Shown: piece after piece, positions 12,128 through 26,101 of the stretch | Layout: each line of letters begins with the position of its first letter | How positions within the stretch are numbered: the first letter of the stretch is position 1 | From: Ascidiella aspersa | Taxonomy: Eukaryota | NCBI GenBank assembly: GCA_963924565.1 | Contig: OZ004615.1 | Span: forward strand, 20,460,001-20,524,000 | Reading direction: 5' to 3' | Length of the DNA: 64,000 nucleotides | Notes under the pieces: model-generated | Seen by the model: the letters and a program-made list of their open reading frames with translations, nothing else | Told to the model about the DNA's origin: nothing | The model's database searches: none | Program-made: the position numbers and the translations under genes

Positions 12128-15100
12128 TTATCTGCGAAGTTCTAATTTAACCTTGCACTCTCTCGGCACGACTAACGTGGAAACAATAGCGTCCAATGGT
12201 GGCAATTTACCGTTTGCGGAACGGATATTAAAGTTTTGAATAATCTTTACAAAAAAGAAGAAGATCTCAACGCGGGCCAAGCTCTCTCCGAGGCAAAACC
12301 GGGGTCCGATGGAAAACGGAATAATCTTGTTGGAGGCAACGAACTTTCCCTCTTCGTCTATGTGCCTGTGCGGATCGAACCTTTCCGGATCAGGCCAGGT
12401 CTCCGGGTCCATATTTGCCCCATCTAGGTTAGATATAACCTGCAAGTAAATATGAAGATATAATTTTATATCGAATTGCTCTGCTCAATTATTTAATCCT
12501 TGATGGGACATTAGAAGTCATCTTCAACGTATAGTTTGCTTATAAAACTTACACGAGTGCCTTTTGGCATTACAAAGCCTTCCAATTCGACTTGTGAAGA
12601 TGTGCAGTGGTCGACGCCCATGTGTACAATGGTTTTAATCCTCATCACCTCTTGTATAAAGGCGCACGTAACTGGCAGGTCGAGCCTCTTTGACATTAAA
12701 GGAGTCCCCGACGTCCCTATATGGTACACATGGATGTATATTGTAGTTTGTTTAAAAGTTTGAAGATAACATTTGTTGTGTGTTGCTTTTTTATAAAGAC
12801 CTTATGATTTTTTATGCCCCATATTACCTTAGGTTTTCTCGAGAGGAAAGTTAACCACACAGAAGCACGGGGCTTGACGTGGCCGTTTTGCTATCGACCG
12901 ATTATATAAGTCTAATGTATTTACTGATCATTCAAAAAAAAATTGCCATTTTGTCAAGTGTACAACCAAAGAATTTATTTTACCAAAAGTTTTATCGATT
13001 TCGTCTTTGATTTGCTTCTGGTAGTCCGGAAAATGAAGGTAATGGATAAACAACCACGTCAATGTTGTACTTGAGGTTTCTGAGCCTGCCACAAAGAGAT
13101 CACGACATGTGGCTACCAACTGTGCATCCTAAACAGCACAGTTGTATTTAACTTTAAAATATAAAAGCAAAAACGTTAATATCTTTGCATTGATATTAAA
13201 AAGGAACTTCGTATAGATCTTTAAATATAGTAATTCCATGAATAAACTGTTGCTACCAGGCATAGTAACGGTCAAAAGCAGTTCCGCTGGTAATTGTAAC
13301 TGCAGAGGAGCAATACTTATGGTTATTAATAGTATTCTCTTATTAAACGATATTCCGACATATTCGCTAAGTATATATTAAATGCTTTTAATTGTGCTGC
13401 TGGTAGTGCTTAAAATCAGTTAAACATTTTTTTCGAAATCTAATTTCAATCAAGCCCTGCTGCTTACCGTGAATCTTGACTGTTGTGGTGTTATTCCGTT
13501 CTTTTGCTCGTAAATGAATGCGTCGATATAATCGTGAATATTGTCACGATCAAAGCGATTTTTATGTTCCTCGATGCGATTTTTCATGAAACCTTAGAAA
13601 GGAAAGAGAGCTTCGTAGCATTAATGGCACTGAAAAGTGTTTTTAGCTACACATTTATTTCAATAGCATTTAATTGTCGGTACCAAACAAATTCGAGAAA
13701 ACAAAAAGGTCGAGATAAACAAATGCCATATAGTGACAAATTGGCAAATGCTAAGCAGTATAGGGATTTATGGCATGCCTTCGGTGGTATTCCAGCATAA
13801 AAATACGGCTGGCCAGTGGGCAATTGTATTTGTTTAGCATATACTTATACTTAAATGTATACGAACAAGGTAAATCAAGACCTAAACTAAACAAAATAGT
13901 TCAACATCATTTAGTAAGGGTTCATGGCTGTCACCGAGAAAACAATTATACAGCTCAAGAAAACGTTCTAATAACTTTGTCAAAATATTTTCACGACACG
14001 AGAAGTCCAATGGTGCGATGCTGCGCCACATTACCTTCTAGATTAAATTAAAGTTTAATCCAAAACTCTTAAATTTACTGGCCACGTAAATACTAGTCGC
14101 AAACCTTGTCGTAAATAGTAATTAGAAATTACCTAATATGTCCAGCATCCTCATCCCAAATACCCTTGTAGCTTCTGAAAATGGCGGAATTCTTGCCAGA
14201 AAACCAATAAAACTTAACATCGTTAATTTCTTTGCGTGTTTTGGATCGGCAAATCTGTCGGGAGAATGTTCGTGGTTTAGTTTAAATCATGAAAAAATGG
14301 AATAATCAAGGTTTAATTACACTTACAGCATTTCAAGCGTGTTAAGCAGCTTTATGAAGTCTTCATCTGTGTAATCATGGCGCTTTCCAAACGCAATTTG
14401 CATGATGACGTTTGACGTTAGCAAGTATAAGTATTCCTTTAAATAATATTAAATTATGGATTGCCTACTTAAACTAGAAGTCGTGTTACTCTAACTATTT
14501 TGTATTGCCCTAATTAACAGTTAAGTTAATGGCTGACGTACAGCAGGGGTTGTATTACTTTTTTAAAGTACACACTTTTTTTTTGGTTTAACATTGGCTT
14601 AAATGTTACAGTCCTAAATGTAGTATGACACATTAATTGCATCGAAAAAAAAAAACGCAACAGCATAAGTATAACACTTTAGCGTTTCCAAATTAAGATA
14701 ATACATTTAGTGTATTTGTTACGATAAAGCCATTATCTGTTTTTGGTAAATCTACTGTGAAATGATTCTTTGGAGTAGCACGACTGCAAATGGCCAAACT
14801 GCAAACGATAATAAAAAACATTGCGATTTATGAAGCACCTTTAAAAAGCGGTTATGTCAACGAATTGCGGAAACGATCATCGTTGCAAAATAACTATACT
14901 GTAAAATGACATTGCCGCAACACACACAACAGCAAATATACAGAGCCGCCACTTTAACCTGCATTCGTAAAAAGACGGCTTTTTGGTGCATTAGTATCAG
15001 ACATATAAACCTAAAACCATTAACATCTTCATCCTAAGTTTTTTCTTGGGTGCCTTTAACCACACACTTTTGGCAAACAGATCTCAAATTTTGTAGAAGT

Positions 15101-16394: not shown

Positions 16395-18915
16395 TTTGAT
16401 TAACATATCCACAGTAATATTTTATTAAAATTATACCCAGCAGGTATAATTTTACCTTTGTTAAAAATAAGGTTAATTGCAAAAAATATACTGTATGCAA
16501 TTTAAGCGGTTGCAGGTTTGGCGTAGAAAAGTATTTCCTGCTCTTATGTTGATTTCTGTAGACAAGCCTAAACTCCCATAAACCAATGGCAGTTATTTTT
16601 CTAACTTGTTACGTTTCAATCTTGCCACTGTTAACTTACAACTAGTTTACTATTGATGACGTTAACTGGTCTGATACAACAAAGTTTATATGATATGAGC
16701 TACTTGCTTGTGCACTTCTAATTCGTAACTCTTACCACGCATTCAAGCGAAACACTCGTTTAGCGTCACGCTTTGTGGCTGCCCAGTAAAAGTCAACTTT
16801 TCATTACATCGGTCATTCTCGCATCACACCATAGGTCAACCATTGGGCCTTACGGAATATGTGCAACAATCCTGGCGTAATATGATCCGATACGATATTT
16901 TAAGTCTTTGTTTTTGATACAGAATTATCCTGGACTTGTTATGACAACAGTCCGAGTCGTCGGGTAATTACGAACCTTAACAAACAAATGTTATGTTAGA
17001 AATGTTAGCTACAACTTTTACGGTACTAATCGGATATTTTAAGAACTGTCAATTAAGAAATGAAAAGCGGCTAGCAGAAAGGCGTGTGCCTTCTTACATC
17101 CAAGTCTCGTTATCTATTATTAATTGTTCATACATTTTTCGCAGTTATTATAGTTTTAAGCCCTTGCATTTGTACCTTAGTTTAACCTGGTTAAGTTGCC
17201 TTGGGCTACACTGTCACATCTTGTAAGTTCAGGGCCAACTATGCTAAAACAAAACGTAAACAGTCAGTAGTAGGCACCAAAAGATGTTCCGATTTCGGTG
17301 ACGTTGTTTTAACATTTCACTTGATATCACACTAAATGCTAGTATTATAATTATGACGTGCTTGTGCTCGTCTTGTTGTTTATTTCGACTTTGATGTTGT
17401 TCTAATTTTCGTATTTTTGCCGTTCTCCCAAGAGTTATGATTACAATTTTTTATAATAAGATTTTAGTGTAATTAATTACTTCCTAGGCAGGAATGCAGT
17501 CTTTTTAAAAGACAGGAAAATCTCTTTTTTAGTTTCGCTTTTTGAACATCTATAGATGCTTTTTTTACAGAAAAAAATAAATAGGTTCGAATAAACAGTT
17601 AATTCTTTGCTTGACAAAATATTGTTTTCTGTGACGTTAGGGTGTTGTGAGAACAATAAAGTAGATGTCAGACTATTTTTAATCCTAGTCTTGGGCGTAC
17701 CACGAAAGCATAGTCTAAAAACAAACAGAAAAGTTTTGCAAATTTCTCTCTTACGACATAGGTTGTATATTATTGTGCATATTTCAACAAAGAAATATTT
17801 GACCACAGTACTACCTGACTCCACTAAATTAAAACCTAACAAACTGCTGTCTAGACATTTGAACGTGTTTATTTTTAGATTGCGACATTTATTTAACATT
17901 ACAATTAACCTAGCTAAGCATTTAATGAGTTTAATTAATATGCTTGTTTCGACGGTGTTGCAATCGTACATGGCAGGCTTCGGCAGCATAGTTGCCAGAC
18001 CAAAATTGACTGCGAGGGGGATTATATCTGTCACGATTCTATAAATTGGTCAGTCGGACACGTTTTTCGATTTTGTAGGCCTATTACGTAGGCATCTTTT
18101 TCGTGTTATTTGGCGCAGCAAACACATTAATTACACGCAATGAAAGATAACATGTCGTTACTACTGGTCGGTAGAGCAGCATATTTAAGCATTTTTGTGA
18201 TTCAATAAAAAAAAACGATCAGCCATAAGTTGCATGTTGAAACATAAAAGTCACGCATTTTTTATTAACGCGTCGCTTTATTTTATATGCCCATATATTT
18301 TACAGAAATTACATGATGCGTACCCATTAATATTACCAAGTGATTATATTGTTGTATGATTTATTTGTTAATTACAATGATGTGACATTTAACTTTAAAG
18401 ATACTTAATGAATTGATTGAGTTAGCAATAGGGCGATTATTGTTTTACTTAGAAAATCTAAATTTTGTCAAAACTTATACGTCGTTGGGTCAAAATGTGC
18501 CAAAATTATTTCCAGTCAAGGCTTAGGTAAATAAATTAGGATGATTGACTTTGTGGTAGAAGGTAGATTAATTTACAGTAATTGTTCATTAACACTACAA
18601 TGCGTTTACATCAACTATGTAAAAATCAGATTACAAACAAAGTGCTTCATTATAAAATTAAGTTTTGCACTTAAAAACATTTTTCTTGCGATATGTTAGA
18701 ATTTTGTTAATTCTTACAAAAGGATATTTTTCAAAATCGGACTAATTTACCGAATTTAAAGGTTTAACGTTTGTTTTAAGGACAACGACTTGGCTTTAAA
18801 TTGAATTGCTTTTATTATGACTTGACAGGGACTTGACTTGTCATTCATTCAAAATGACATAAAAATCCCAGGTACATAATGACGTGCTAAAATTATTTTT
18901 GATACTATCAGTAAT

Positions 18916-20270
18916 TTATTTTCGAGCTTCCGATTTTACTTTGCACTCTTTCGGCACGGCTATGGTTGAAACTATCGGGTCCAGTGATGGCAATTCTTCG
19001 TTTGCGCAACGAATGGTGAAATTTTGGATTATCTTTACAAAGAAAATTAATAGTTCAACGCGTGCCAAGCTCTCTCCGAGGCAAAACCGGGGTCCGATTA
19101 AAAACGGAATAATCTTGTGGGAGGCAACGAACTTTCCGTCTTCGTCTATGTGCCTGAACGGGTCGAACTTTTCTGGATTAGGCCACGTCTCAGGGACCAT
19201 ATTTGCCCCATCCAAGTTTGCCAGGACCTACAGAAAAATGCGCATGCACTTAAATGGACAACCTGTATATTAAGTAAGATCCTGATATTTGTGACGTTAT
19301 TTTAAAAGTCACGAGTTTAATATGATCTGACTAGTTATGTTGTAGAATTAATTATAGTGCTTGCTAATTTGTGGTAAACATACTGCTATAGTGGTACGCG
19401 ACTTTAATTAAAACACTTACGATTGTTCCTTTTGGAATCACAAAACCTTCCAACTCTACTTGTTCTGATGTGCAGTGCGCAATACCGAAGGGTACAACAG
19501 TCCTCACTCTTAGAACCTCTTGAATGAAGGCACATGTAACTGGCATGTCACGTCTGTTTGACATTGTAGGAATCCCCGAATGGCCTATATGTAATGATGT
19601 ATGTGATTAAATAAATCTCAAGAAGTTCTGTTTGGAAATGATTTGTTTTGCCTTGTGGCATAACAGACCCGATAGGACATTGCTAAATAAATCGCGAACA
19701 GTCATAATCTGACACACTAAGTAAGGGCCAGCAATTAAACAGTGAATAAAACCGTTCTTACCCAATTGTTCATCGATTTCATTTGCGATTTTATCCTGGT
19801 AGTTGGGATAGTTGAGGTAGTGCACGAACAACCAAGCCAACGTTGTACTGGTAGTTTCTGAACCTGCTACCGAAAGATCTCCACAGGTCGTCGTCAGCTG
19901 TTTGTTCTGAATAAGACTATAACTGGTAATTCCAAAGCTCTTAAATTCACTTAAATTTTACAGATAACACCAATTTATGGTTTTCCCCAAGGACGCAATA
20001 TTAAGGAAAAACTATATTCCATCTTAGTTGGAAATGTACTTTCATAATCTTTTGAAATTATAACTAAACAAAAATCACTTGGGCCTTTTATGCTTGAAAT
20101 GCATCATGAATTTTGTTATTATTTCCGTCATGCAGCTTTGCTCACAGTGAATCCTAACTTTTGTGATCTATTTCTGTTTCTTTGCTCATAAATAAACGCG
20201 TCGATATAATCGTTCACGTTGTCAGGATCAAACCGTTTTCTATGTTCTTCGACGCAATCATTCGTAAAAT
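18916..20270 (-). pseudogene. Orphan 3' half of a CYP2-like gene (exons 6-9 only); pseudogene fragment or alternative 3' module of G3
   Basis: Exons 20270-20146, 19906-19762, 19584-19421, 19227-18916 have canonical sizes (125/145/164/312), GT-AG sites and no stops. Motifs AGSETT, EVLR, PEKFDP, FLIGPRFCLG. No exons 1-5 are visible in the 1.5 kb before the G3 stop codon. Confidence 0.8.
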
Positions 20271-21772
20271 CTGAAAAAGTCATTGTTGGAAGAGTTACTA
20301 TTAGGGCGATTAATTTTTGACTGGGCACCTTAAGTCAAAATTTTGTTAAAATCGTTTACACAATTGACAAAACTGTTGTTAGTTTTTTAAATTGCACAAA
20401 TTTTATACAAATTAGGTTCGAAATACAAAAACATTTATACTGTGGGATATCTTTATATAGAAGCAACAGAGAATTAACCCCAGGCCAGGTGCAGCGCGTT
20501 TGCAACATTATGCCTGACAGCTATATCTTATTTTGTATAAAAGCATGTCTGGAAAAGTTCTAAACGTTTTCAAAAAATCTAAATTTTTTGAAATAAGACG
20601 TAAAACACTATCGAGAGGCTATGGGCCGATTGGTCGCCGCCGTTGGGTTAGGGGTGGGGTTTAGGGTTAGGTCAAAGGTAGTTTAAATTTCGTTATGACA
20701 TTTTAGTTCTGAAGTCGCATAAAAAGCCAAACATTTTATTAAAATCGGAACGCAAACTGTTAAAACGGGATTTGTATGTGTATAAAGAATGTCATTAAAT
20801 TAGGTAGTTTTTAGTCTCATTACGCAAACAACATGAAACCTCGCCCGTGAACTGAACATATTAATAAGGCCATTTGAGTAACCTGACGCAAAACAAGTTT
20901 GCCTGGTCACCACTCTAAAACTGTAGCTACTTATGTAAGATTTATAGCTTTATATAGCAACTATAGTAAATTAAAGTAGGCTGATAAATGAAGGTAAAAA
21001 GTACCTTAAACTCAAACTAATTGCAACAGACGATTTTTTTGTTGATTTATTATGGGAAGGTGCCACCAACCCTAATATTAACTTTATTTTCATGCTGTGT
21101 TTAAAACGAAAAATATATAAATTCACGAAAGAATATATTTTATTATCAATTTAAGGGTTTTATTGGAAACATCCGAGAAAAAACAGCCAGGTGCGGGCAA
21201 ACTTTCAATTCGGGTAACAAATGAGAGCATTATGGATGTTTGGTATGATTTGATTCTTGCACAAAATGCGATGTTACATCACAGGGCAATCTAATTTAAT
21301 AACGGTAAACATTGATAAAACACTGGTTCGTTGCGGATGTCACATTAAACATTATACAGGTTAATTATTCATGGCGAACTATTACAACCACCACGAACAA
21401 GCGCACCTCTATCATTTTTAACCCCGGAAAATATGTTTCTCTATTAATAAACAATTTATACAATAACGTTAACATGCTTAATAGCTGCAGTCTTAACTAA
21501 ATCCGTCAAGTATATTGACACATGCAACTATGATAATTGCGTTTGGAATAATGTCTACACTAGTGTTAACACTGTAGGTTAGTATTTGATGCTTAGCGAC
21601 CTGGGTAAAGCAGCATATTATATGAAACTATATACATTTGGTAGAACAATTCGACGGGTTATAAGATTGCCCAGACAAATGAAAGGCATTACTTTTGTTG
21701 TTACACGTAATTGCTTTATTTCTGATGCAAAAGCTTGCAGAGTGATGCCTCTAATTTCTAACATTGTGCCAG

Positions 21773-24700
21773 TCAACTGCGAACGTTTAGTTTAACTTTG
21801 CACTCTCTGGGCACCACTAAAGTTGAAATACTCGAATCCAGTGGCAAAAATTTCTCATTGGCGCAAGTAATGGTAAACTTTTGAATTATTTTGACAAAAA
21901 AGACGAAGATTTCAACTCGGGCCAAGCTCTCTCCGAGGCAAAACCGAGGTCCGATAGAAAACGTGATAACATTGTTTGAGGCAACGAACTTTCCCTCTTC
22001 GTCTATGTGCCTGTGTGGGTCGAACTTTTCAGGATCAGGCCAGGTCTCCGGGTCCATATTTGCCCCATCCAAATTAGCAAGAACCTACAAGAACAATAGT
22101 AAAAATATATTAATAGTAAATATTTCGTATTCTGAAAAAATATTTAACTGGCATTTTTGTTTGATAACTCTTGCTTGTGTTTATAGATTGCCTCTCAAAC
22201 CCTAATTCTAGGCCCTAACAATGCTATATCCGGACCCCCGTTTGTATTTGGCTTTATTATGTAGCTAGTTTGAATACTGATATTATAGATAATTCTTCGT
22301 TATATATTGTTGCTCTACACGTCCTATTGTAAGTTTCCTTTTAGACTGAGGCACGAATATAACACAAATAACACACCAATGATTCCAAGGGCACTTACAG
22401 TTGTGCCTTTTGGCAGCACGAATCCTTCAAACTCGACTTCAGTCGAAGTGCAGTGCTCGGCGCCCAAAGGTGCAATGGATCTAACCCTCAGCACCTCTTG
22501 TATGAAGGCACATGTTACTGGCATGTCGAGTCTCTTCGACATAGTAGGAGTCCCCGACGTTCCTACGTTGTATATCATATTCAGATATTTTACAATTGAT
22601 TGCGTTCACGCCCGCGAAATATAGACTCGTAAGGTTGACTAAGGTTTCCCGTAGTACCTCAACATTTCACGGAAAAATTGATACAGTTTTAGAAGATCAA
22701 AAATGCCATGCAAGTGTTTTAACATAAAAAGCTAATCTTACCCAGAATTTCGTGAATTTCGTCTTTAATTTGCTGTTGATAATCCTTGTAGATGAGGTAA
22801 TGCGCAACCAACCACGTGAGCATTGTGCTTGAAGTTTCTGAGCCTGCCAAGAAAATATCTCGACAAGCGGCGATAAGCTGTGCGTCCTACAATACGTTTA
22901 AAACCATACCAAGTTATAAACTATTGCTACCAGGCATAGTAATATTAATCAAAAACAGCTCTTCTGGTAATTTTAATTCTTAACCAACGTTTTAGCAACC
23001 TATGTAAATCGCCTTAGTCAGTGTTCCCTGGTCGGTATTTTAGATTACCATAACATGTTAGTTTACATAAATTAACTTACAAGGTATACCTTATCACATT
23101 TGAAGACCCAAAATAGAAATAAATAAAGTAATTTATATAATTAATCCTAAAGCATAAGTTGGATGTAAAGTTGGCGCAGTAAGAATAAAACGATAAGTAT
23201 GTCAGATTTGGTAATTTCGATTAAAATCGTAATAACTTTGTGAAATGTTTACGTCAGAAAAAATAAATAGGAATCCCTATAGGATATTGTGTTACGCTTA
23301 CTGTGGACTTTTTCGATTTGACTCCGTTTCTTTGCTCGTATATATACGCGTCGATGTAATCGTCAACATTGTCGGGGTCGAAGTTTTTTTTATTCTCTTC
23401 GATTCTGTCTCTCATAAAACCTTAGAATTAAATAAAGATCGTTCGTATATTTCTCACTGATGCCATAAAGATATGTCAATCAGGCGCGGCCAGACCGGGG
23501 GTGGTTCCAGGTAATTCTTTGGGATCACCTCGTTTTTGTATAGAAATATGTGTGATATTTGTAAAGTAGGTAACTTATAAAACACCATGCTAAAATCGCC
23601 TTTAACAAAGCTTGGGATTGCTGGCATGAATTTACTTCACTTGCATCCACTGCCATAGCTTAATCGACCGCTTTAGTAAATGAAAGTATACACTGCTTAC
23701 TCAGCCCGACACTTATTATTACGTCCATATCTCGCGTCAGTATTCGTCCGTCTTTATAGTTTTATAACATCCAACTAATAGTTTAAAACATCCAACTAAT
23801 AGTCGAATAAAGTGTTTATTTCGAATTTACCTATTATGTCTTGCATCCTCTTCTCAAACATTTTGACAGCTTCTGAAAATGGAGGACAATTTGCCAGAAA
23901 ACCGAGACCGAATACCACCGACAATTTTTTCTCGTATTTCGGGTCAGCAAATCTAAAGTAGACAACATTGTTTAGGAGCAAACAAGTATAACACACTACA
24001 TCGAAAATTGTTTGTATACTTACAACATTTCAAGCGTGTTAAGTATTTTTGTAAAGTCTTCATCTGTGTATTCATAGTGCTTTCCAAATGCGATTTGCAT
24101 GACGACGTTTGACGTTAGCAAGTAAAAGTATTCCTATGAACAACAAACAATTGCCTACTTTTCTTATCACAAAGGTGACATAACACTACCATTTTACTTT
24201 TGCAATACACTACAATTCTCCTTGTAAGGTATAGTGATTTTCAAACTGTTTGCCGGAGATTGTTAAGTGTGCCGCAAACTTTTGAAATTTCACAAATTGC
24301 CTATTTTAATTAACAAATCTATGCAGACAAGCATACAAGACATTATTGTACGCTATCATTTAACTTTTATAGTATTATGTTACGGGTGATTTTGAAGTTA
24401 TACGGTATTATTGTTTTGTAGAGTTTAGGAAGCACTGGTCTAAGGGATCACATTCCCAGCTAATTGTTAAATCTTTATGGGGTTTTGTGCAATTTTTTTG
24501 GTGTTCCGAACCCCGCGGTTTAGCTTTTTTGTGTACTCTGCGGTTAGATTTGAAGCAAATTGTACAAAAGACAAGAACTGGATAAATTTAGTTTCACAAA
24601 ACAATAACTAAATGCATGTAAACATTATTTTACTGGTAAGTGTCTCATATGTCGTGTATTACTGAAGACCGATCACGAGTTTACATACAAAAGAGCTTTC

Positions 24701-26101
24701 AAAAGAAGAACAGCTTTTTTAAGCAGCCCACCCGGTCACATAACATATTCAGCATCCATGTTATAAAGATTAGTATACAAACCTATACCTTTAAGTCTAT
24801 CGTATCGTCTGGTTTGTGTTTGTTTTTCAAATGTTCGATCAGTAGATCCCCTTCTTCATTTATCAATGTTTCAAACTTTTTCTTGCCCAAGCCTTTCCTG
24901 TGGAAATTGTATGTGGAATAAAAAGACGAAGGTTAACTTTATATAACATTTTACATAAACCTTATCAAGGTTATTTGCATAAATAGAGGAATCAGGTGTC
25001 ACTATGTAAAACAAATTGTATTGAATTCTCAACAAGTTTTAATACTACCATGCTTTCAGGTTAAAGTATAAAGTCAATGTATTATTTTATACGTTGACCT
25101 GATGAAGTACGGTTGTGCGAAAGCTTGTCGAGAATTCAATAAAATTTGTCTTTACATAGTGGCACCTGATTCGTCTAATTAGAATTAGGCAAATACGGCG
25201 ATTTACAAAGATTTGCATGAATGTTATCATTTGTTATTTGGTAAAAAAATTATTAACTTGAATTTAAGAACTCGACATTTAGATTTGGTTTGCCTAGAAT
25301 TCCTTTCTGATATTGTAAAATACCATTTTACCCAGTTTAAAATTGCGTACAAAAATGGAAAATAAGGCAAAAAGCGACCATACCCCCCACGAAAACGATT
25401 ATTCTGACAATGGTCATTGAAACACTTACTCTCGAAAATACTTTAACGCGAAATGCTTCTCAGATTTAAAGTCCTCGTCGTACTTTTTAAAAATAAAACC
25501 GTCGTGTCCGGTTGTTCGGCAGAATAGGACATTCCAGGGACGATCAGAAAAGGCATTTCCCTGCTTTACGAAAGCCTAAACAATTTTACAGTTAGCCAAC
25601 AAAGTATATTAGTAAGTCATCAGCCAAAGAGTAAAGGAATAAACACACTTAAAATGGTATAAGCAGGTTTAATCACAATGATTACTTTTCTTATAGTACT
25701 TAAAGGTGTCAAATGAGCCTTATCGATTTACAGTATAGGAAGCGGCAAACAGGCTTTAACTAACCTTGTATTATAAAACACAAAGTTTTGTATGAACATG
25801 TTACCTTGTTAATGACGTCAAATGTGTTTAAAACCACCATTTCGTTCATTCCCATTCGCACTGACATGATAGGTCCGTATCGTTCGAGACTCCATTTCTT
25901 GAATATCTTAGCCGGAGGTGATTTGGCAAGGTAAGGCAGCACTCCAACAATAGGAAAACCGATCGGACCTGGCGGGAATTTAGCGTGAGGTCGTGACCTC
26001 CAGTAAAAATACAACAGAAACAAAACAAAACTGATCCAAGTCCAGGAGTTTAAACTTTGCACGAATCCGACGACGTTTTGTATAATTTCCCGCGGTAGCA
26101 T
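21773..26101 (-). CDS. Cytochrome P450, clan 2 (CYP2-like), gene G3; 9 exons, ~507 aa
   Basis: Exons 26101-25805, 25575-25430, 24897-24789, 24133-24024, 23952-23831, 23420-23302, 22886-22742, 22562-22399, 22084-21773. Motifs AGSETS, EVLR, FSIGPRFCLG. Confidence 0.93.
24989..25170. mobile_element. Inverted Penelope-like pLTR pair (foldback) in G3 intron 2
   Basis: Arm 24989-25072 is the reverse complement of 25086-25170, with a hammerhead core in each arm (one intact, one broken). Confidence 0.7.
25094..25131 (+). ncRNA. Minimal (Penelope-type) hammerhead ribozyme, antisense within G3 intron 2
   Basis: ttgac-CTGATGA-A-gtac(ggtt)gtgc-GAAA-GC-TT-gtcga: stem I ttgac/gtcga, stem II gtac/gtgc, palindromic AAGCTT stem III, then AATAAA. 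Confidence 0.7.

What the first reader, a model, noticed from the sequence alone, without database searches (positions are those of the whole stretch)
18916..23952. Orphan, fully open exon 6-9 module behind G3: possible swappable C-terminal half of a P450
Seen: exons 6-9 at 18916-20270 keep canonical lengths, all seven splice sites and an open frame over 746 nt, yet have no exons 1-5 of their own. The module lies 1.5 kb downstream of G3. The G3 exon-5 donor (23831, phase 1) fits the orphan exon-6 acceptor (20270), giving 784+746=1530 nt, an intact 509-aa P450. That protein would pair G3's SRS1-3 with a different I-helix and SRS5 (TVVPFGIAH vs SIAPLGAEH). Inference: mutually exclusive 3' modules, competing with G3's AATAAA near 21715, could give two enzymes from one promoter. 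Against: non-conservative changes (RDxF->GDLS, FSIG->FLIG, KLE->KSE) also fit a young pseudogene.
Basis: partly seen in the sequence, partly recalled or inferred. Interest (0 to 1): 0.8.

Follow-up and report, generated by a model that had tools for sequence, protein, structure and literature searches.

The report
Headless P450 remnant spliced onto neighbour
A leftover back half of an old cytochrome P450 gene sits just behind an intact sister gene, and in one RNA data set its last three exons are spliced onto that neighbour's transcripts, a known kind of read-through chimera rather than a tidy swappable enzyme half.

Summary
Four minus-strand P450 exons (20270-20146, 19906-19762, 19584-19421, 19227-18916; 746 nt) are open, keep all seven splice sites, lie 1,502 nt behind G3's stop, and have no exons 1-5 in between.

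The module is not a young copy. It is 73-76% nt identical to its window paralogs, no closer copy exists in the 308-Mb genome, and it is not sister to G3's own 3' half. Orphan-branch dN/dS is 0.28, against 0.16 background (p=0.04) and below 1 (p=6e-5).

It is transcribed in one data set. In run X3 (spliced contigs), one contig joins orphan 3'UTR, e9, e8 and e7 directly to the G3 exon-8 donor (19906 to 22399, GT..AG). Its depth of 7.2 is similar to the G3 e8-e9 junction at 7.85.

The observed mRNA is in frame (404 + 206 codons) but repeats the exon 7-8 segment, so it does not encode a canonical P450.

Best reading: the decapitated relic of an old paralog, captured by read-through splicing from G3, as with human CYP3A7-CYP3AP1. 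The RNA evidence rests on one run. A second, thinly sampled RNA run showed no orphan reads.

The parts
20146..20270 (-). Orphan exon 6 (125 nt; AG acceptor, GT donor; open). Not covered by the spliced contigs of X3.
   Evidence: coordinates, frame. (X3 depth 0 in bin 20028-20218). (exon 6 alone: orphan-branch omega at the upper bound, not different from 1, p=0.53).
19762..19906 (-). Orphan exon 7 (145 nt; I-helix, AGSETT). Its acceptor is the one joined to the G3 exon-8 donor.
   Evidence: PF00067 positions 261-305. (joint 19906 to 22399, CT..AC on the + strand, X3 depth 7.2).
19421..19584 (-). Orphan exon 8 (164 nt; K-helix ExxR, SRS5 TVVPFGIAH).
   Evidence: PF00067 positions 313-361. (X3 joints 19583-19761 and 19225-19419).
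18916..19227 (-). Orphan exon 9 (312 nt with stop; PERF-like region and Cys pocket F-L/S-IGPRFCLG). Two non-synonymous variants at 18932 and 19100.
   Evidence: PF00067 positions 363-447, 77.6 bits. (S243L and L187S in X2 and X3).
18500..18915 (-). Orphan 3' UTR. The X3 contig runs through it and about 424 nt beyond 18500. It contains a high-copy repeat at about 18691-18881.
   Evidence: record 9: record positions 425-1150 lie on 18500-19225; X2 word depth 38,717 in bin 18691-18881.
20271..21772 (-). Spacer between the G3 stop and orphan exon 6. It holds G3's 3' UTR to about 21117, no relic of exons 1-5, and a degenerate CCCTAA-like run near 20650-20720.
   Evidence: no exon 1-5 hit. (X3 record 10 on 21117-22007; X2 DNA contigs collinear). 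(AATAAA at 21720, 21164, 21144, 21088, 21051). (sequence).
22399..22562 (-). G3 exon 8, whose donor (GT at 22398-22397) is used with two acceptors: G3 exon 9 and orphan exon 7.
   Evidence: joints 22082 to 22397 at depth 7.85 and 19906 to 22399 at depth 7.2; X3 record 11 at depth 16.3 ends exactly at 22399. (last 30-mer unique in the window).
21773..22084 (-). G3 exon 9, the regular terminal exon, skipped in the chimeric form.
21773..26101 (-). G3, an intact 9-exon, 507-aa CYP2-clan P450 and the upstream partner.
   Evidence: model. (X3 record 11 joins exons 8-7-6-5-4 at the modelled borders).

Best explanation
The orphan is the surviving 3' part (exons 6-9) of a once complete, anciently diverged member of this tandem CYP2-clan P450 cluster. 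It has lost its promoter and exons 1-5.

It has no start of its own, so it is expressed only as a passenger of the gene in front. Some G3 transcripts read through G3's poly(A) site near 21117. In these, the G3 exon-8 donor is spliced to the orphan exon-7 acceptor instead of to G3 exon 9. That 2,492-nt intron removes G3 exon 9, the spacer and orphan exon 6.

This is the usual pattern of cis-splicing between adjacent genes, second-to-last exon to second exon. It also happens to be the in-frame choice, phase 0 to phase 0. A join of G3 exon 8 to orphan exon 6 would shift the frame and hit a stop inside exon 6.

The resulting mRNA encodes 404 G3 codons plus 206 orphan codons, with the exon 7-8 segment (Pfam p450 positions about 261-361) present twice. 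I infer that this is not a working P450. I also infer that the orphan's open frame mostly reflects its long earlier life as a complete gene, followed by a fairly recent and still mild relaxation.

Shown: the anatomy, the age, the junction in one run, and dN/dS. Inferred: the order of events, the read-through mechanism, a role for nonsense-mediated decay in hiding exon-6 forms, and non-function of the product.
For: Cluster context:
- The window holds 7 other P450 genes on the same strand, all open, plus four further fragments: exon-1-like at 46949-46766, 37789-37637 and 10345-10178, and exon-9-like at 39410-39309.
- Relics of partial genes are therefore common here.

Age and origin:
- The orphan shares 67-73% aa and 73-76% nt with the five nearest paralogs (GC, GD, G3, GE, GF). 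A whole-genome DNA search found nothing closer.
- It branches between GF and (GE,(G3,(GC,GD))) with 82-95% bootstrap support for its exclusion from that clade in the nt and aa trees (80% in the codon tree).
- G3's 5' half also sits with GC/GD. The orphan is therefore not G3's former or duplicated tail.

Selection:
- Orphan-branch omega is 0.284. That is below 1 (LRT 15.96, p=6.5e-5) and slightly above the background of 0.158 (LRT 4.15, p=0.042).
- The orphan has the most changes at positions invariant in the other 7 copies: 9, against 2-7 for the others. Within the 6-gene ingroup it has 15, against 2-9.
- The reference allele carries two derived radical replacements (S for L at codon 243, L for S in FSIG). 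X2 and X3 lack both.

Expression:
- X3 record 9 (1,491 nt, depth 7.2) runs 3'UTR-e9-e8-e7, then 30 nt of the G3 exon-8 end, with exact GT..AG borders.
- X3 record 11 (G3 e8-e4, depth 16.3) stops exactly at 22399, as expected at a fork in a k=31 graph.
- The e8-e9 branch has depth 7.85, so 7.2 + 7.85 is close to 16.3.
- X3 differs from the reference at 18932 and 19100, so it is not the reference haplotype.

Frame: G3 exons 1-8 total 1,212 nt, and orphan exons 7-9 total 621 nt open in frame 0.

Known precedents:
- The '2-2' rule of cis-SAGe (PMC4450057, abstract and passages).
- CYP3A7 spliced to the pseudogene CYP3AP1 (one passage and reference 74 in PMC9305658).
Against: - The RNA evidence is one contig in one run whose kind is not on record. 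I call X3 RNA only because its contigs are spliced and its intron and spacer bins are empty.
- The raw-read RNA run X5 (about 6% of it read) gave about 1x on G3 exon 9 and its UTR, and no read on the orphan exons. The chimera is therefore not seen everywhere.
- The 30-nt side could also fit the exon-8 ends of GC or GD at exactly 90% (3 of 30 differ). I assign it to G3 from the fork at 22399, the depth sum and adjacency.
- A share of roughly two fifths to a half is high for transcriptional noise.
- Omega of 0.25 on exons 7-9, with exon 6 looking unconstrained, is what lasting selection on the captured exons would also give. That contrast is not significant (p=0.11).
- GD, an intact gene, has a similar branch omega of 0.33. 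The orphan's rise is therefore not distinctive.
- The time of the 5' loss is not dated by anything here.
Confidence: 0.6

Rival explanations
1. The orphan is a maintained alternative 3' cassette. G3 exons 1-5 (or 1-6) are spliced to orphan exons 6-9 (or 7-9), giving a second, canonical-length P450 with a different I-helix, SRS5 and Cys pocket from one promoter.
For: - The phases fit: exon-5 donor phase 1 to exon-6 acceptor, and exon-6 donor phase 0 to exon-7 acceptor.
- All orphan splice sites score in the normal range.
- Orphan-branch omega is 0.28, well below 1.
- The I-helix AGSETT, the ExxR and the Cys-pocket motifs are present.
- The orphan is joined to G3 transcripts, so read-through does reach it.
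- X2 and X3 alleles carry canonical FSIG and KVKL.
Against: - No joint 23831 to 20270 or 23302 to 19906 appears in any of the 4 runs laid.
- X3 has no cover on exon 6 in bin 20028-20218.
- X3 record 11 passes the exon-5 and exon-6 donors without a fork, and record 9 passes the exon-7 acceptor into G3 exon 8 without a fork.
- The orphan carries changes at positions fixed in all 7 paralogs (CRD to CGD, F to S in the I-helix, NMD to NMV).
- Contigs drop rare forms, so absence is weak evidence.
Confidence: 0.1
2. The exon 8 to exon 7' chimera is itself the selected product. Either it is an alternative last-exon switch that tunes how much normal G3 enzyme is made, or it encodes a P450-like protein with a duplicated I-to-K segment and the orphan's haem-binding end that has some use.
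For: - Its depth is similar to that of the normal exon 8-9 form in X3 (7.2 against 7.85).
- It is in frame.
- Exons 7-9 have omega 0.25, significantly below 1, while the skipped exon 6 shows omega not different from 1.
- It is absent in the X5 sample, which would fit regulated use.
Against: - The frame match follows from the shared exon phases of the family, not from adaptation.
- The exon 6 against exons 7-9 contrast is not significant (p=0.11).
- Two I-helices cannot both sit over one haem. This is general knowledge of the P450 fold and was not tested here.
- The reference allele carries two damaging-looking replacements in exon 9.
- There is only one run.
Confidence: 0.15
3. Artefact. The orphan is silent, and the junction is an assembly or library chimera, or the genome assembly has dropped the orphan's real exons 1-5.
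For: - There is a single contig with only 30 nt on the G3 side.
- X3's library type is not on record.
- X5 shows no orphan reads.
Against: - The joint sits exactly on a GT donor and an AG acceptor of two annotated exons, and it agrees with the fork and the depths of the neighbouring contigs.
- Two further X3 joints reproduce the orphan's introns 7 and 8 exactly.
- DNA run X2 (about 90x) gives contigs collinear with the reference over 18500-24200.
- The window has no N.
- No contig bridges the whole spacer. The breaks are at 20663-20741, 21293-21319 and 21753-22040.
Confidence: 0.05

Closest known systems
Human CYP3A7.1L: CYP3A7 mRNA spliced to exons of the downstream pseudogene CYP3AP1 (Rodriguez-Antona et al. 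2005, J Biol Chem 280:28324). I saw only one sentence and the reference in PMC9305658. [quoted passage not shown]
   Same: A P450 gene in a tandem cluster reads through into a partial pseudogene lying behind it on the same strand. The pseudogene's exons are spliced on, which changes the C-terminal end of the reading frame.
   Different: Here three exons (206 codons, including the whole haem-binding region) are added after the penultimate exon, so a 103-codon segment is present twice. How much of CYP3A7 is replaced I know only from memory, not from a call. I did not read either original paper.
[quoted passage not shown] 2015, PMC4450057, abstract and passages; Prakash et al. 2010, PMC2953495, search listing and start of abstract only).
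   Same: Same-strand neighbours 1.5 kb apart, well under 30 kb. The intergenic region is removed as an intron with exact exon borders. [quoted passage not shown]
   Different: The 3' partner is not a gene but a headless paralog of the 5' gene, so the chimera repeats part of the same domain. The apparent share of transcripts (about 37-48% by contig depth) is high. It was seen in one run only.
Unprocessed (duplicated) pseudogenes and gene relics in birth-and-death P450 clusters.
   Same: A partial copy without promoter or 5' exons inside a tandem array that also holds four more fragments. There is a mild rise of dN/dS and replacements at otherwise invariant sites.
   Different: No stop, no frameshift and no lost splice site over 746 nt, despite about 25% nt divergence from every paralog. 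It is also present in spliced RNA.
Genes with arrays of alternative cassette exons sharing common exons (for example the UGT1A type of organisation; recalled, not looked up).
   Different: The junctions that such a system needs were not observed here. The observed junction adds the second module to the first instead of replacing it.

Membership tests
Cytochrome P450 (Pfam PF00067), CYP2 clan | Significant match to the p450 profile | tested here: met
   Orphan exons 7, 8 and 9 searched singly gave 43.5, 49.1 and 77.6 bits against the 22.8 cut-off, on profile positions 261-447 of 462. Exon 6 alone gave no hit. The nearest solved chains for exon 9 are CYP2R1, CYP17 and CYP2C (E 1e-15 to 3e-14).
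Cytochrome P450 (Pfam PF00067), CYP2 clan | Cys-pocket FxxGxRxCxG, K-helix ExxR, I-helix (A/G)Gx(D/E)T(T/S). The motif names are recalled. | tested here: met
   F(L/S)IGPRFCLG, QEVLR and AGSETT are visible in the translation. The x2 position is L in the reference and S in X2 and X3.
Cytochrome P450 (Pfam PF00067), CYP2 clan | A complete domain, with the N-terminal anchor and helices A-H encoded by exons 1-5 | tested here: not met
   No exon 1-5 similarity in 20271-21772 (34 queries, best E 0.035). No unpaired ingroup-type exon 1 nearby in the genome.
cis-SAGe / conjoined (read-through) transcript | Same-strand neighbours less than 30 kb apart | tested here: met
   Both are on the minus strand, with 1,502 nt from the G3 stop to orphan exon 6.
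cis-SAGe / conjoined (read-through) transcript | Exact exon-exon junction with canonical intron ends between the two units | tested here: met
   Joint 19906 to 22399, skipping 2,492 nt, with ends CT..AC on the + strand (GT..AG on the minus strand). X3 depth 7.2, one contig, 30 nt on the shorter side.
cis-SAGe / conjoined (read-through) transcript | [quoted passage not shown] | tested here: met
   G3 exon 8 of 9 joined to orphan exon 7, the second of its four exons. The rule comes from PMC4450057.
cis-SAGe / conjoined (read-through) transcript | Recurrence in independent RNA samples | tested here: inconclusive
Seen in 1 of 2 RNA-type runs laid. X5 (6% of the run read, about 1x on G3 exon 9) had no orphan read.
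   No such joint in 4 of 4 runs laid. The X3 contigs show no fork at those sites. Contigs can drop rare forms.
   The branch omega of 0.28 averages the time before and after the loss. No ortholog from another species could be fetched: the exon-9 search gave 2 proteins of 57-58% identity.
Unprocessed pseudogene | Loss of promoter and start, or another disabling lesion | tested here: met
   Exons 1-5 are absent. There is no lesion inside exons 6-9.
Unprocessed pseudogene | Neutral evolution (dN/dS near 1) | tested here: not met
   Omega is 0.284, and omega=1 is rejected (p=6.5e-5). If background omega applied before and omega=1 after, a neutral final stretch of about 15% of the branch would fit. 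That figure is my inference.

The most novel reading that the evidence does not exclude
The headless module is kept by selection as a second 3' end of G3. The skipped exon 6 drifts, while exons 7-9 (omega 0.25) stay constrained because the chimeric message matters. It could matter through minor canonical-length isoforms (G3 exon 6 to orphan exon 7) that contigs hide, or through the abundant in-frame form with a duplicated I-to-K segment. Other unverified notes of this scan mention further headless P450s and P450s with several candidate terminal exons in this genome. If those hold up, modular reuse of P450 3' halves could be a habit of this genome's very large P450 complement.
Probability: 0.12. 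Interest if true: 0.8.

Novelty: new member of a known kind. Interest (0 to 1): 0.42.

Why it matters
This shows, in an invertebrate-style P450 array, the same route seen at the human CYP3A locus. A decapitated paralog does not fall silent. It is picked up by the gene in front and can take a large share of that gene's transcripts.

For annotation, automatic models here may report a 610-codon 'P450' or a truncated one, and neither should be counted as an enzyme.

For evolution, the locus is a concrete, testable case of how a new C-terminal half could be tried out by an existing gene. It only matters beyond that if the capture proves old and selected, which the present data do not show.

Tried and rejected
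- **Orphan as a young copy of a nearby or distant gene: rejected.** The best non-self DNA matches in the whole genome are the window's own paralogs at 73-85% per exon.
- **Orphan as G3's original or duplicated tail: rejected.** In the 3' tree the orphan lies outside (GE,(G3,(GC,GD))). In the 5' tree G3 sits with GC and GD.
- **Hidden exons 1-5 in the spacer: none found.** tblastn with 34 peptides and blastn against the window found only a 51-nt match of 20352-20302 to 11634-11584 and a 26-nt palindrome.
- **A lost 5' half elsewhere: not found.** 112 exon-1-like hits in the genome include no unpaired ingroup-type exon 1 near the orphan.
- **Orthologs in other species by exon 9: nothing useful.** 2 proteins among 2 candidates, at 57-58% identity.
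- **NCBIfam: nothing useful.** Only far sub-threshold bacterial P450 families for exon 9, and none for G3 exon 1.
- **Exon 6 against exons 7-9 as evidence of selective upkeep: a trend only.** p=0.11.
- **Polymorphism contrast: too few variants to test.** Orphan 2 non-synonymous and 0 synonymous; G3 exons 1 and 4. By hand this gives p=0.14, and one search left 10 differences unlisted.
- **Splice-site strength does not explain why exon 7' is used and exon 6' is not.** Both acceptors score 6.6. The frame shift with a stop in exon 6 is my proposed reason (frame 0).
- **Joined models: not searched or folded.** The claim that the chimera cannot fold as a P450 is therefore untested.
- **Supplementary files of papers were not consulted.** The two original CYP3A papers were not read.

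Full report
**What is in the window**

The 64-kb window has no N and about 35-40% G+C. It is a tandem array of P450 genes, all on the minus strand. tblastn and tblastx with G3's exons found eight copies of the exon 6-9 part but only six full sets of exons 1-5. A seventh gene, GA, is cut by the window's end. After fixing the borders by eye and by phase the models are:
- GA (exons 3-9, 63757-59302)
- GB (54963-48401)
- GC (44823-40235)
- GD (36062-29925)
- G3 (26101-21773)
- the orphan (20270-18916)
- GE (16394-12128)
- GF (5160-527)

All seven other genes are open with canonical splice sites. There are four further fragments: exon-1-like pieces at 46949-46766, 37789-37637 and 10345-10178, and an exon-9-like piece at 39410-39309. 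Searched exon by exon, the orphan's exons 7, 8 and 9 each match Pfam p450. Exon 9 is nearest to CYP2R1, CYP17 and CYP2C among solved structures. This is a CYP2-clan array.

The whole assembly is 308.6 Mb in 75 contigs, and the window is C9:20460001-20524000. A search with G3 exon 1 gave 112 exon-1-like hits across the genome, so the P450 complement is very large.

**The observation**

It is correct in every checked detail.
- The orphan exons are 125, 145, 164 and 312 nt (746 nt). They have 4 AG acceptors and 3 GT donors, and one frame is open for 247 codons plus TAA.
- G3 is an intact 507-aa gene.
- The 1,502-nt spacer holds no relic of exons 1-5.
- The orphan's splice sites score in the normal range of the array.
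- If the whole terminal branch (0.186 substitutions per site, about 138 changes) had been neutral, an open frame with intact splice dinucleotides would be expected about once in a thousand, before counting indels.

**Age and origin**

The module is not a young copy.
- It shares 67-73% aa and 73-76% nt identity with GC, GD, G3, GE and GF. Nothing closer exists anywhere in the genome.
- In nucleotide, protein and codon trees of exons 6-9 it branches after GF and before (GE,(G3,(GC,GD))).
- G3's exons 1-5 also group with GC and GD. G3's two halves therefore share a history, and the orphan is neither G3's old tail nor a copy of it.
- The simplest origin is a separate, old member of the array that later lost its 5' half. 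That order of events is inference. Nothing here dates the loss.

**Selection**

I wrote a Goldman-Yang branch model (F3x4, fixed tree, 8 sequences, 248 codon columns).
- It gives omega 0.284 on the orphan branch against 0.158 elsewhere. Equality is weakly rejected (LRT 4.15, p=0.042) and omega=1 is clearly rejected (LRT 15.96, p=6.5e-5).
- Run the same way, the intact genes give 0.10-0.33. GD at 0.33 is also above background (p=0.03), so the orphan's rise is not unique.
- Split by exon, exon 6 (41 codons) gives omega at the upper bound, not different from 1. Exons 7-9 (207 codons) give 0.25 (p=2.7e-5 against 1). The difference between the two parts is not significant (LRT 2.57, p=0.11).
- The orphan has the most replacements at positions invariant in all other copies: 9, against 2-7. 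They include CRD to CGD and F to S at the start of the I-helix, and NMD to NMV.

**Reads**

One search for runs with the orphan stretch (18850-20300) gave five rows. The first four are Logan contig sets whose kind is not on record; X1-X3 belong to one study, X4 to another.
- X1: holds 0.99 of the sampled words.
- X2: holds 0.90.
- X3: holds 0.36.
- X4: holds 0.22 and is labelled as another organism.
- X5: a raw-read RNA run of the same species label as X1.

I laid X5, X4, X3 and X2 on 18500-24200 at 90% likeness.
- **X2** behaves as genomic DNA. All 30 bins are covered at about 75-140, and its contigs are collinear with the reference. They break only at 20663-20741, 21293-21319 and 21753-22040 and at two high-copy repeats.
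- **X4** gives short, low-depth pieces over exons and introns alike, with 0-1 differences. The orphan's DNA is therefore present in a second study.
- **X3** behaves as RNA. Intron and spacer bins are empty or nearly so, and its contigs are spliced.
  - Record 11 (760 nt, depth 16.3) joins G3 exons 8-7-6-5 and on to exon 4 at exactly the modelled borders. It ends exactly at 22399, the last base of exon 8.
  - Record 10 (depth 12.1) covers 21117-22007.
  - A further contig joins exon 8 to exon 9 (22082 to 22397, depth 7.85). One X5 read shows the same joint.
  - Record 9 (1,491 nt, depth 7.2) starts about 424 nt beyond 18500. It covers the orphan 3' UTR and exon 9, skips intron 8 (19225 to 19419), covers exon 8, skips intron 7 (19583 to 19761) and covers exon 7. 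It then continues without extra letters into 30 nt at 22399-22428, the end of G3 exon 8, skipping 2,492 nt that begin and end with the complement of AG and GT.

Two contigs that each carry about 30 nt of the exon-8 end (30 and 32 by the tool's count), and a third contig that stops at that point, are what a k=31 graph gives at a real fork. The depths add up (7.2 + 7.85 against 16.3).

The 30-mer is unique in the window. The exon-8 ends of GC and GD differ from it at 3 of 30 positions, which the 90% threshold alone would not exclude. The fork in the G3 contig and the adjacency make G3 the partner.

By depth, the orphan form is about 37-48% of G3 transcripts in X3 (7.2 against 7.85-12.1). Contig depths are rough.

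Results against the reading:
- X5, of which about 6% was read, has roughly 1x on G3 exon 9 and its UTR (about five reads by my estimate from the bin depths). It has none on the orphan exons.
- No joint to orphan exon 6 was reported in any run.
- X3 has depth 0 in 20028-20218 but 1.62 in 20219-20409. I cannot explain the latter.

**What the junction means**

G3 exons 1-8 are 1,212 nt (404 codons), and orphan exons 7-9 are 621 nt, open from their first base. The message is therefore in frame. It encodes 610 residues in which the segment of Pfam positions about 261-361 (I-helix to the strand after the K-helix) occurs twice, followed by the orphan's haem-binding end.

The frame match follows from the exon phases shared by the family. 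A join of exon 8 to orphan exon 6 would be out of frame and meets a stop within exon 6 (frame 0). I suggest that such forms, if made, are removed by nonsense-mediated decay. This is inference.

The configuration is the one reported as typical for cis-splicing of adjacent genes: same strand, short distance, second-to-last exon to second exon (PMC4450057, abstract and passages).

G3's main 3' end is probably near 21117, about 25 nt past an AATAAA at 21144. Transcripts run through that hexamer, and in X2 it is altered by the variant at 21715.

**Polymorphism**

X2 and X3 both differ from the reference at 18932 and 19100. Both differences are non-synonymous. They change the reference's S243 to L and L187 to S, which are the residues found in all seven paralogs (KVKL, FSIG).

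In G3's exons the listed X2 differences are 4 synonymous and 1 non-synonymous. The numbers are too small for a test, and 10 differences were not listed. The direction fits relaxed constraint on the orphan today.

**Verdict**

The best-supported account is a decapitated old paralog whose last three exons are captured by read-through transcripts of G3.

The closest known case is the human CYP3A7 message spliced to the pseudogene CYP3AP1. I saw this only as one sentence and a reference in PMC9305658. [quoted passage not shown]

I put about 0.6 on this account.

Earlier notes of this scan mention other headless P450s and P450s with several candidate terminal exons in this genome. I did not test them.

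Noticed in passing
window 22893-23083 (G3 intron 6) and 18691-18881 (orphan 3' UTR): Two unrelated high-copy repeats. X2 word depth is 86,590 and 38,717, against about 90 elsewhere. Both are also present in the RNA reads of X5 on both strands, with many loose ends. Each has only a short second match in the window (13242-13268 and 4239-4193).
   Followed up: partly
window about 20650-20720 (minus strand), in the G3-orphan spacer: A degenerate CCCTAA-like (telomere-type) run. X2 depth in bin 20601-20791 rises to 598, and the DNA contigs break there. It could mark an old break-and-repair site at the place where the 5' half was lost. Not tested.
   Followed up: no
window 39410-39309, 37789-37637, 46949-46766, 10345-10178: Four further P450 fragments between the intact genes: one exon-9-like piece (34 aa, 68% to G3) and three exon-1-like pieces. 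The piece at 46.8 kb carries 4 stops in the genome search.
   Followed up: partly
window 53157-53012 and 52997-52908 (GB): A second, diverged copy of the exon-2 end directly behind GB's exon 2 (37% over 30 aa, with a GT after it).
   Followed up: no
window 30540-30380 (GD exon 8): GD's exon 8 is 161 nt instead of 164, a one-codon deletion in the SRS5 stretch (PL-VEH). GD's branch omega is 0.33, the highest of the intact genes.
   Followed up: partly
GC, GD and G3, 5' against 3' halves: Exons 1-5 group G3 with GC (96% support), while exons 6-9 group GC with GD (99%). This suggests gene conversion or an old crossover among these three genes.
   Followed up: partly
X2 has T>A at 21715 and an extra T behind 21718. 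X3, with the reference allele, still transcribes through it.
   Followed up: partly
window 20352-20302 and 11634-11584: A 51-nt stretch just upstream of orphan exon 6 matches, at 82%, a stretch about 500 nt behind GE's stop. Its meaning is unknown. X3 shows a small unexplained depth (1.62) in bin 20219-20409.
   Followed up: no
G000:C9:20525372-20525650 (1.4-1.7 kb beyond the window's end): An exon-1-like hit (52% to G3 exon 1) that is probably GA's exon 1. The array continues past the window.
   Followed up: no
window 21174-21364: X5 RNA reads pile up here (depth 5, against about 1 on the rest of G3's 3' UTR). They carry four fixed differences (21196, 21197, 21294, 21318) that X2 and X3 lack. 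This may be another allele or a related copy elsewhere.
   Followed up: no
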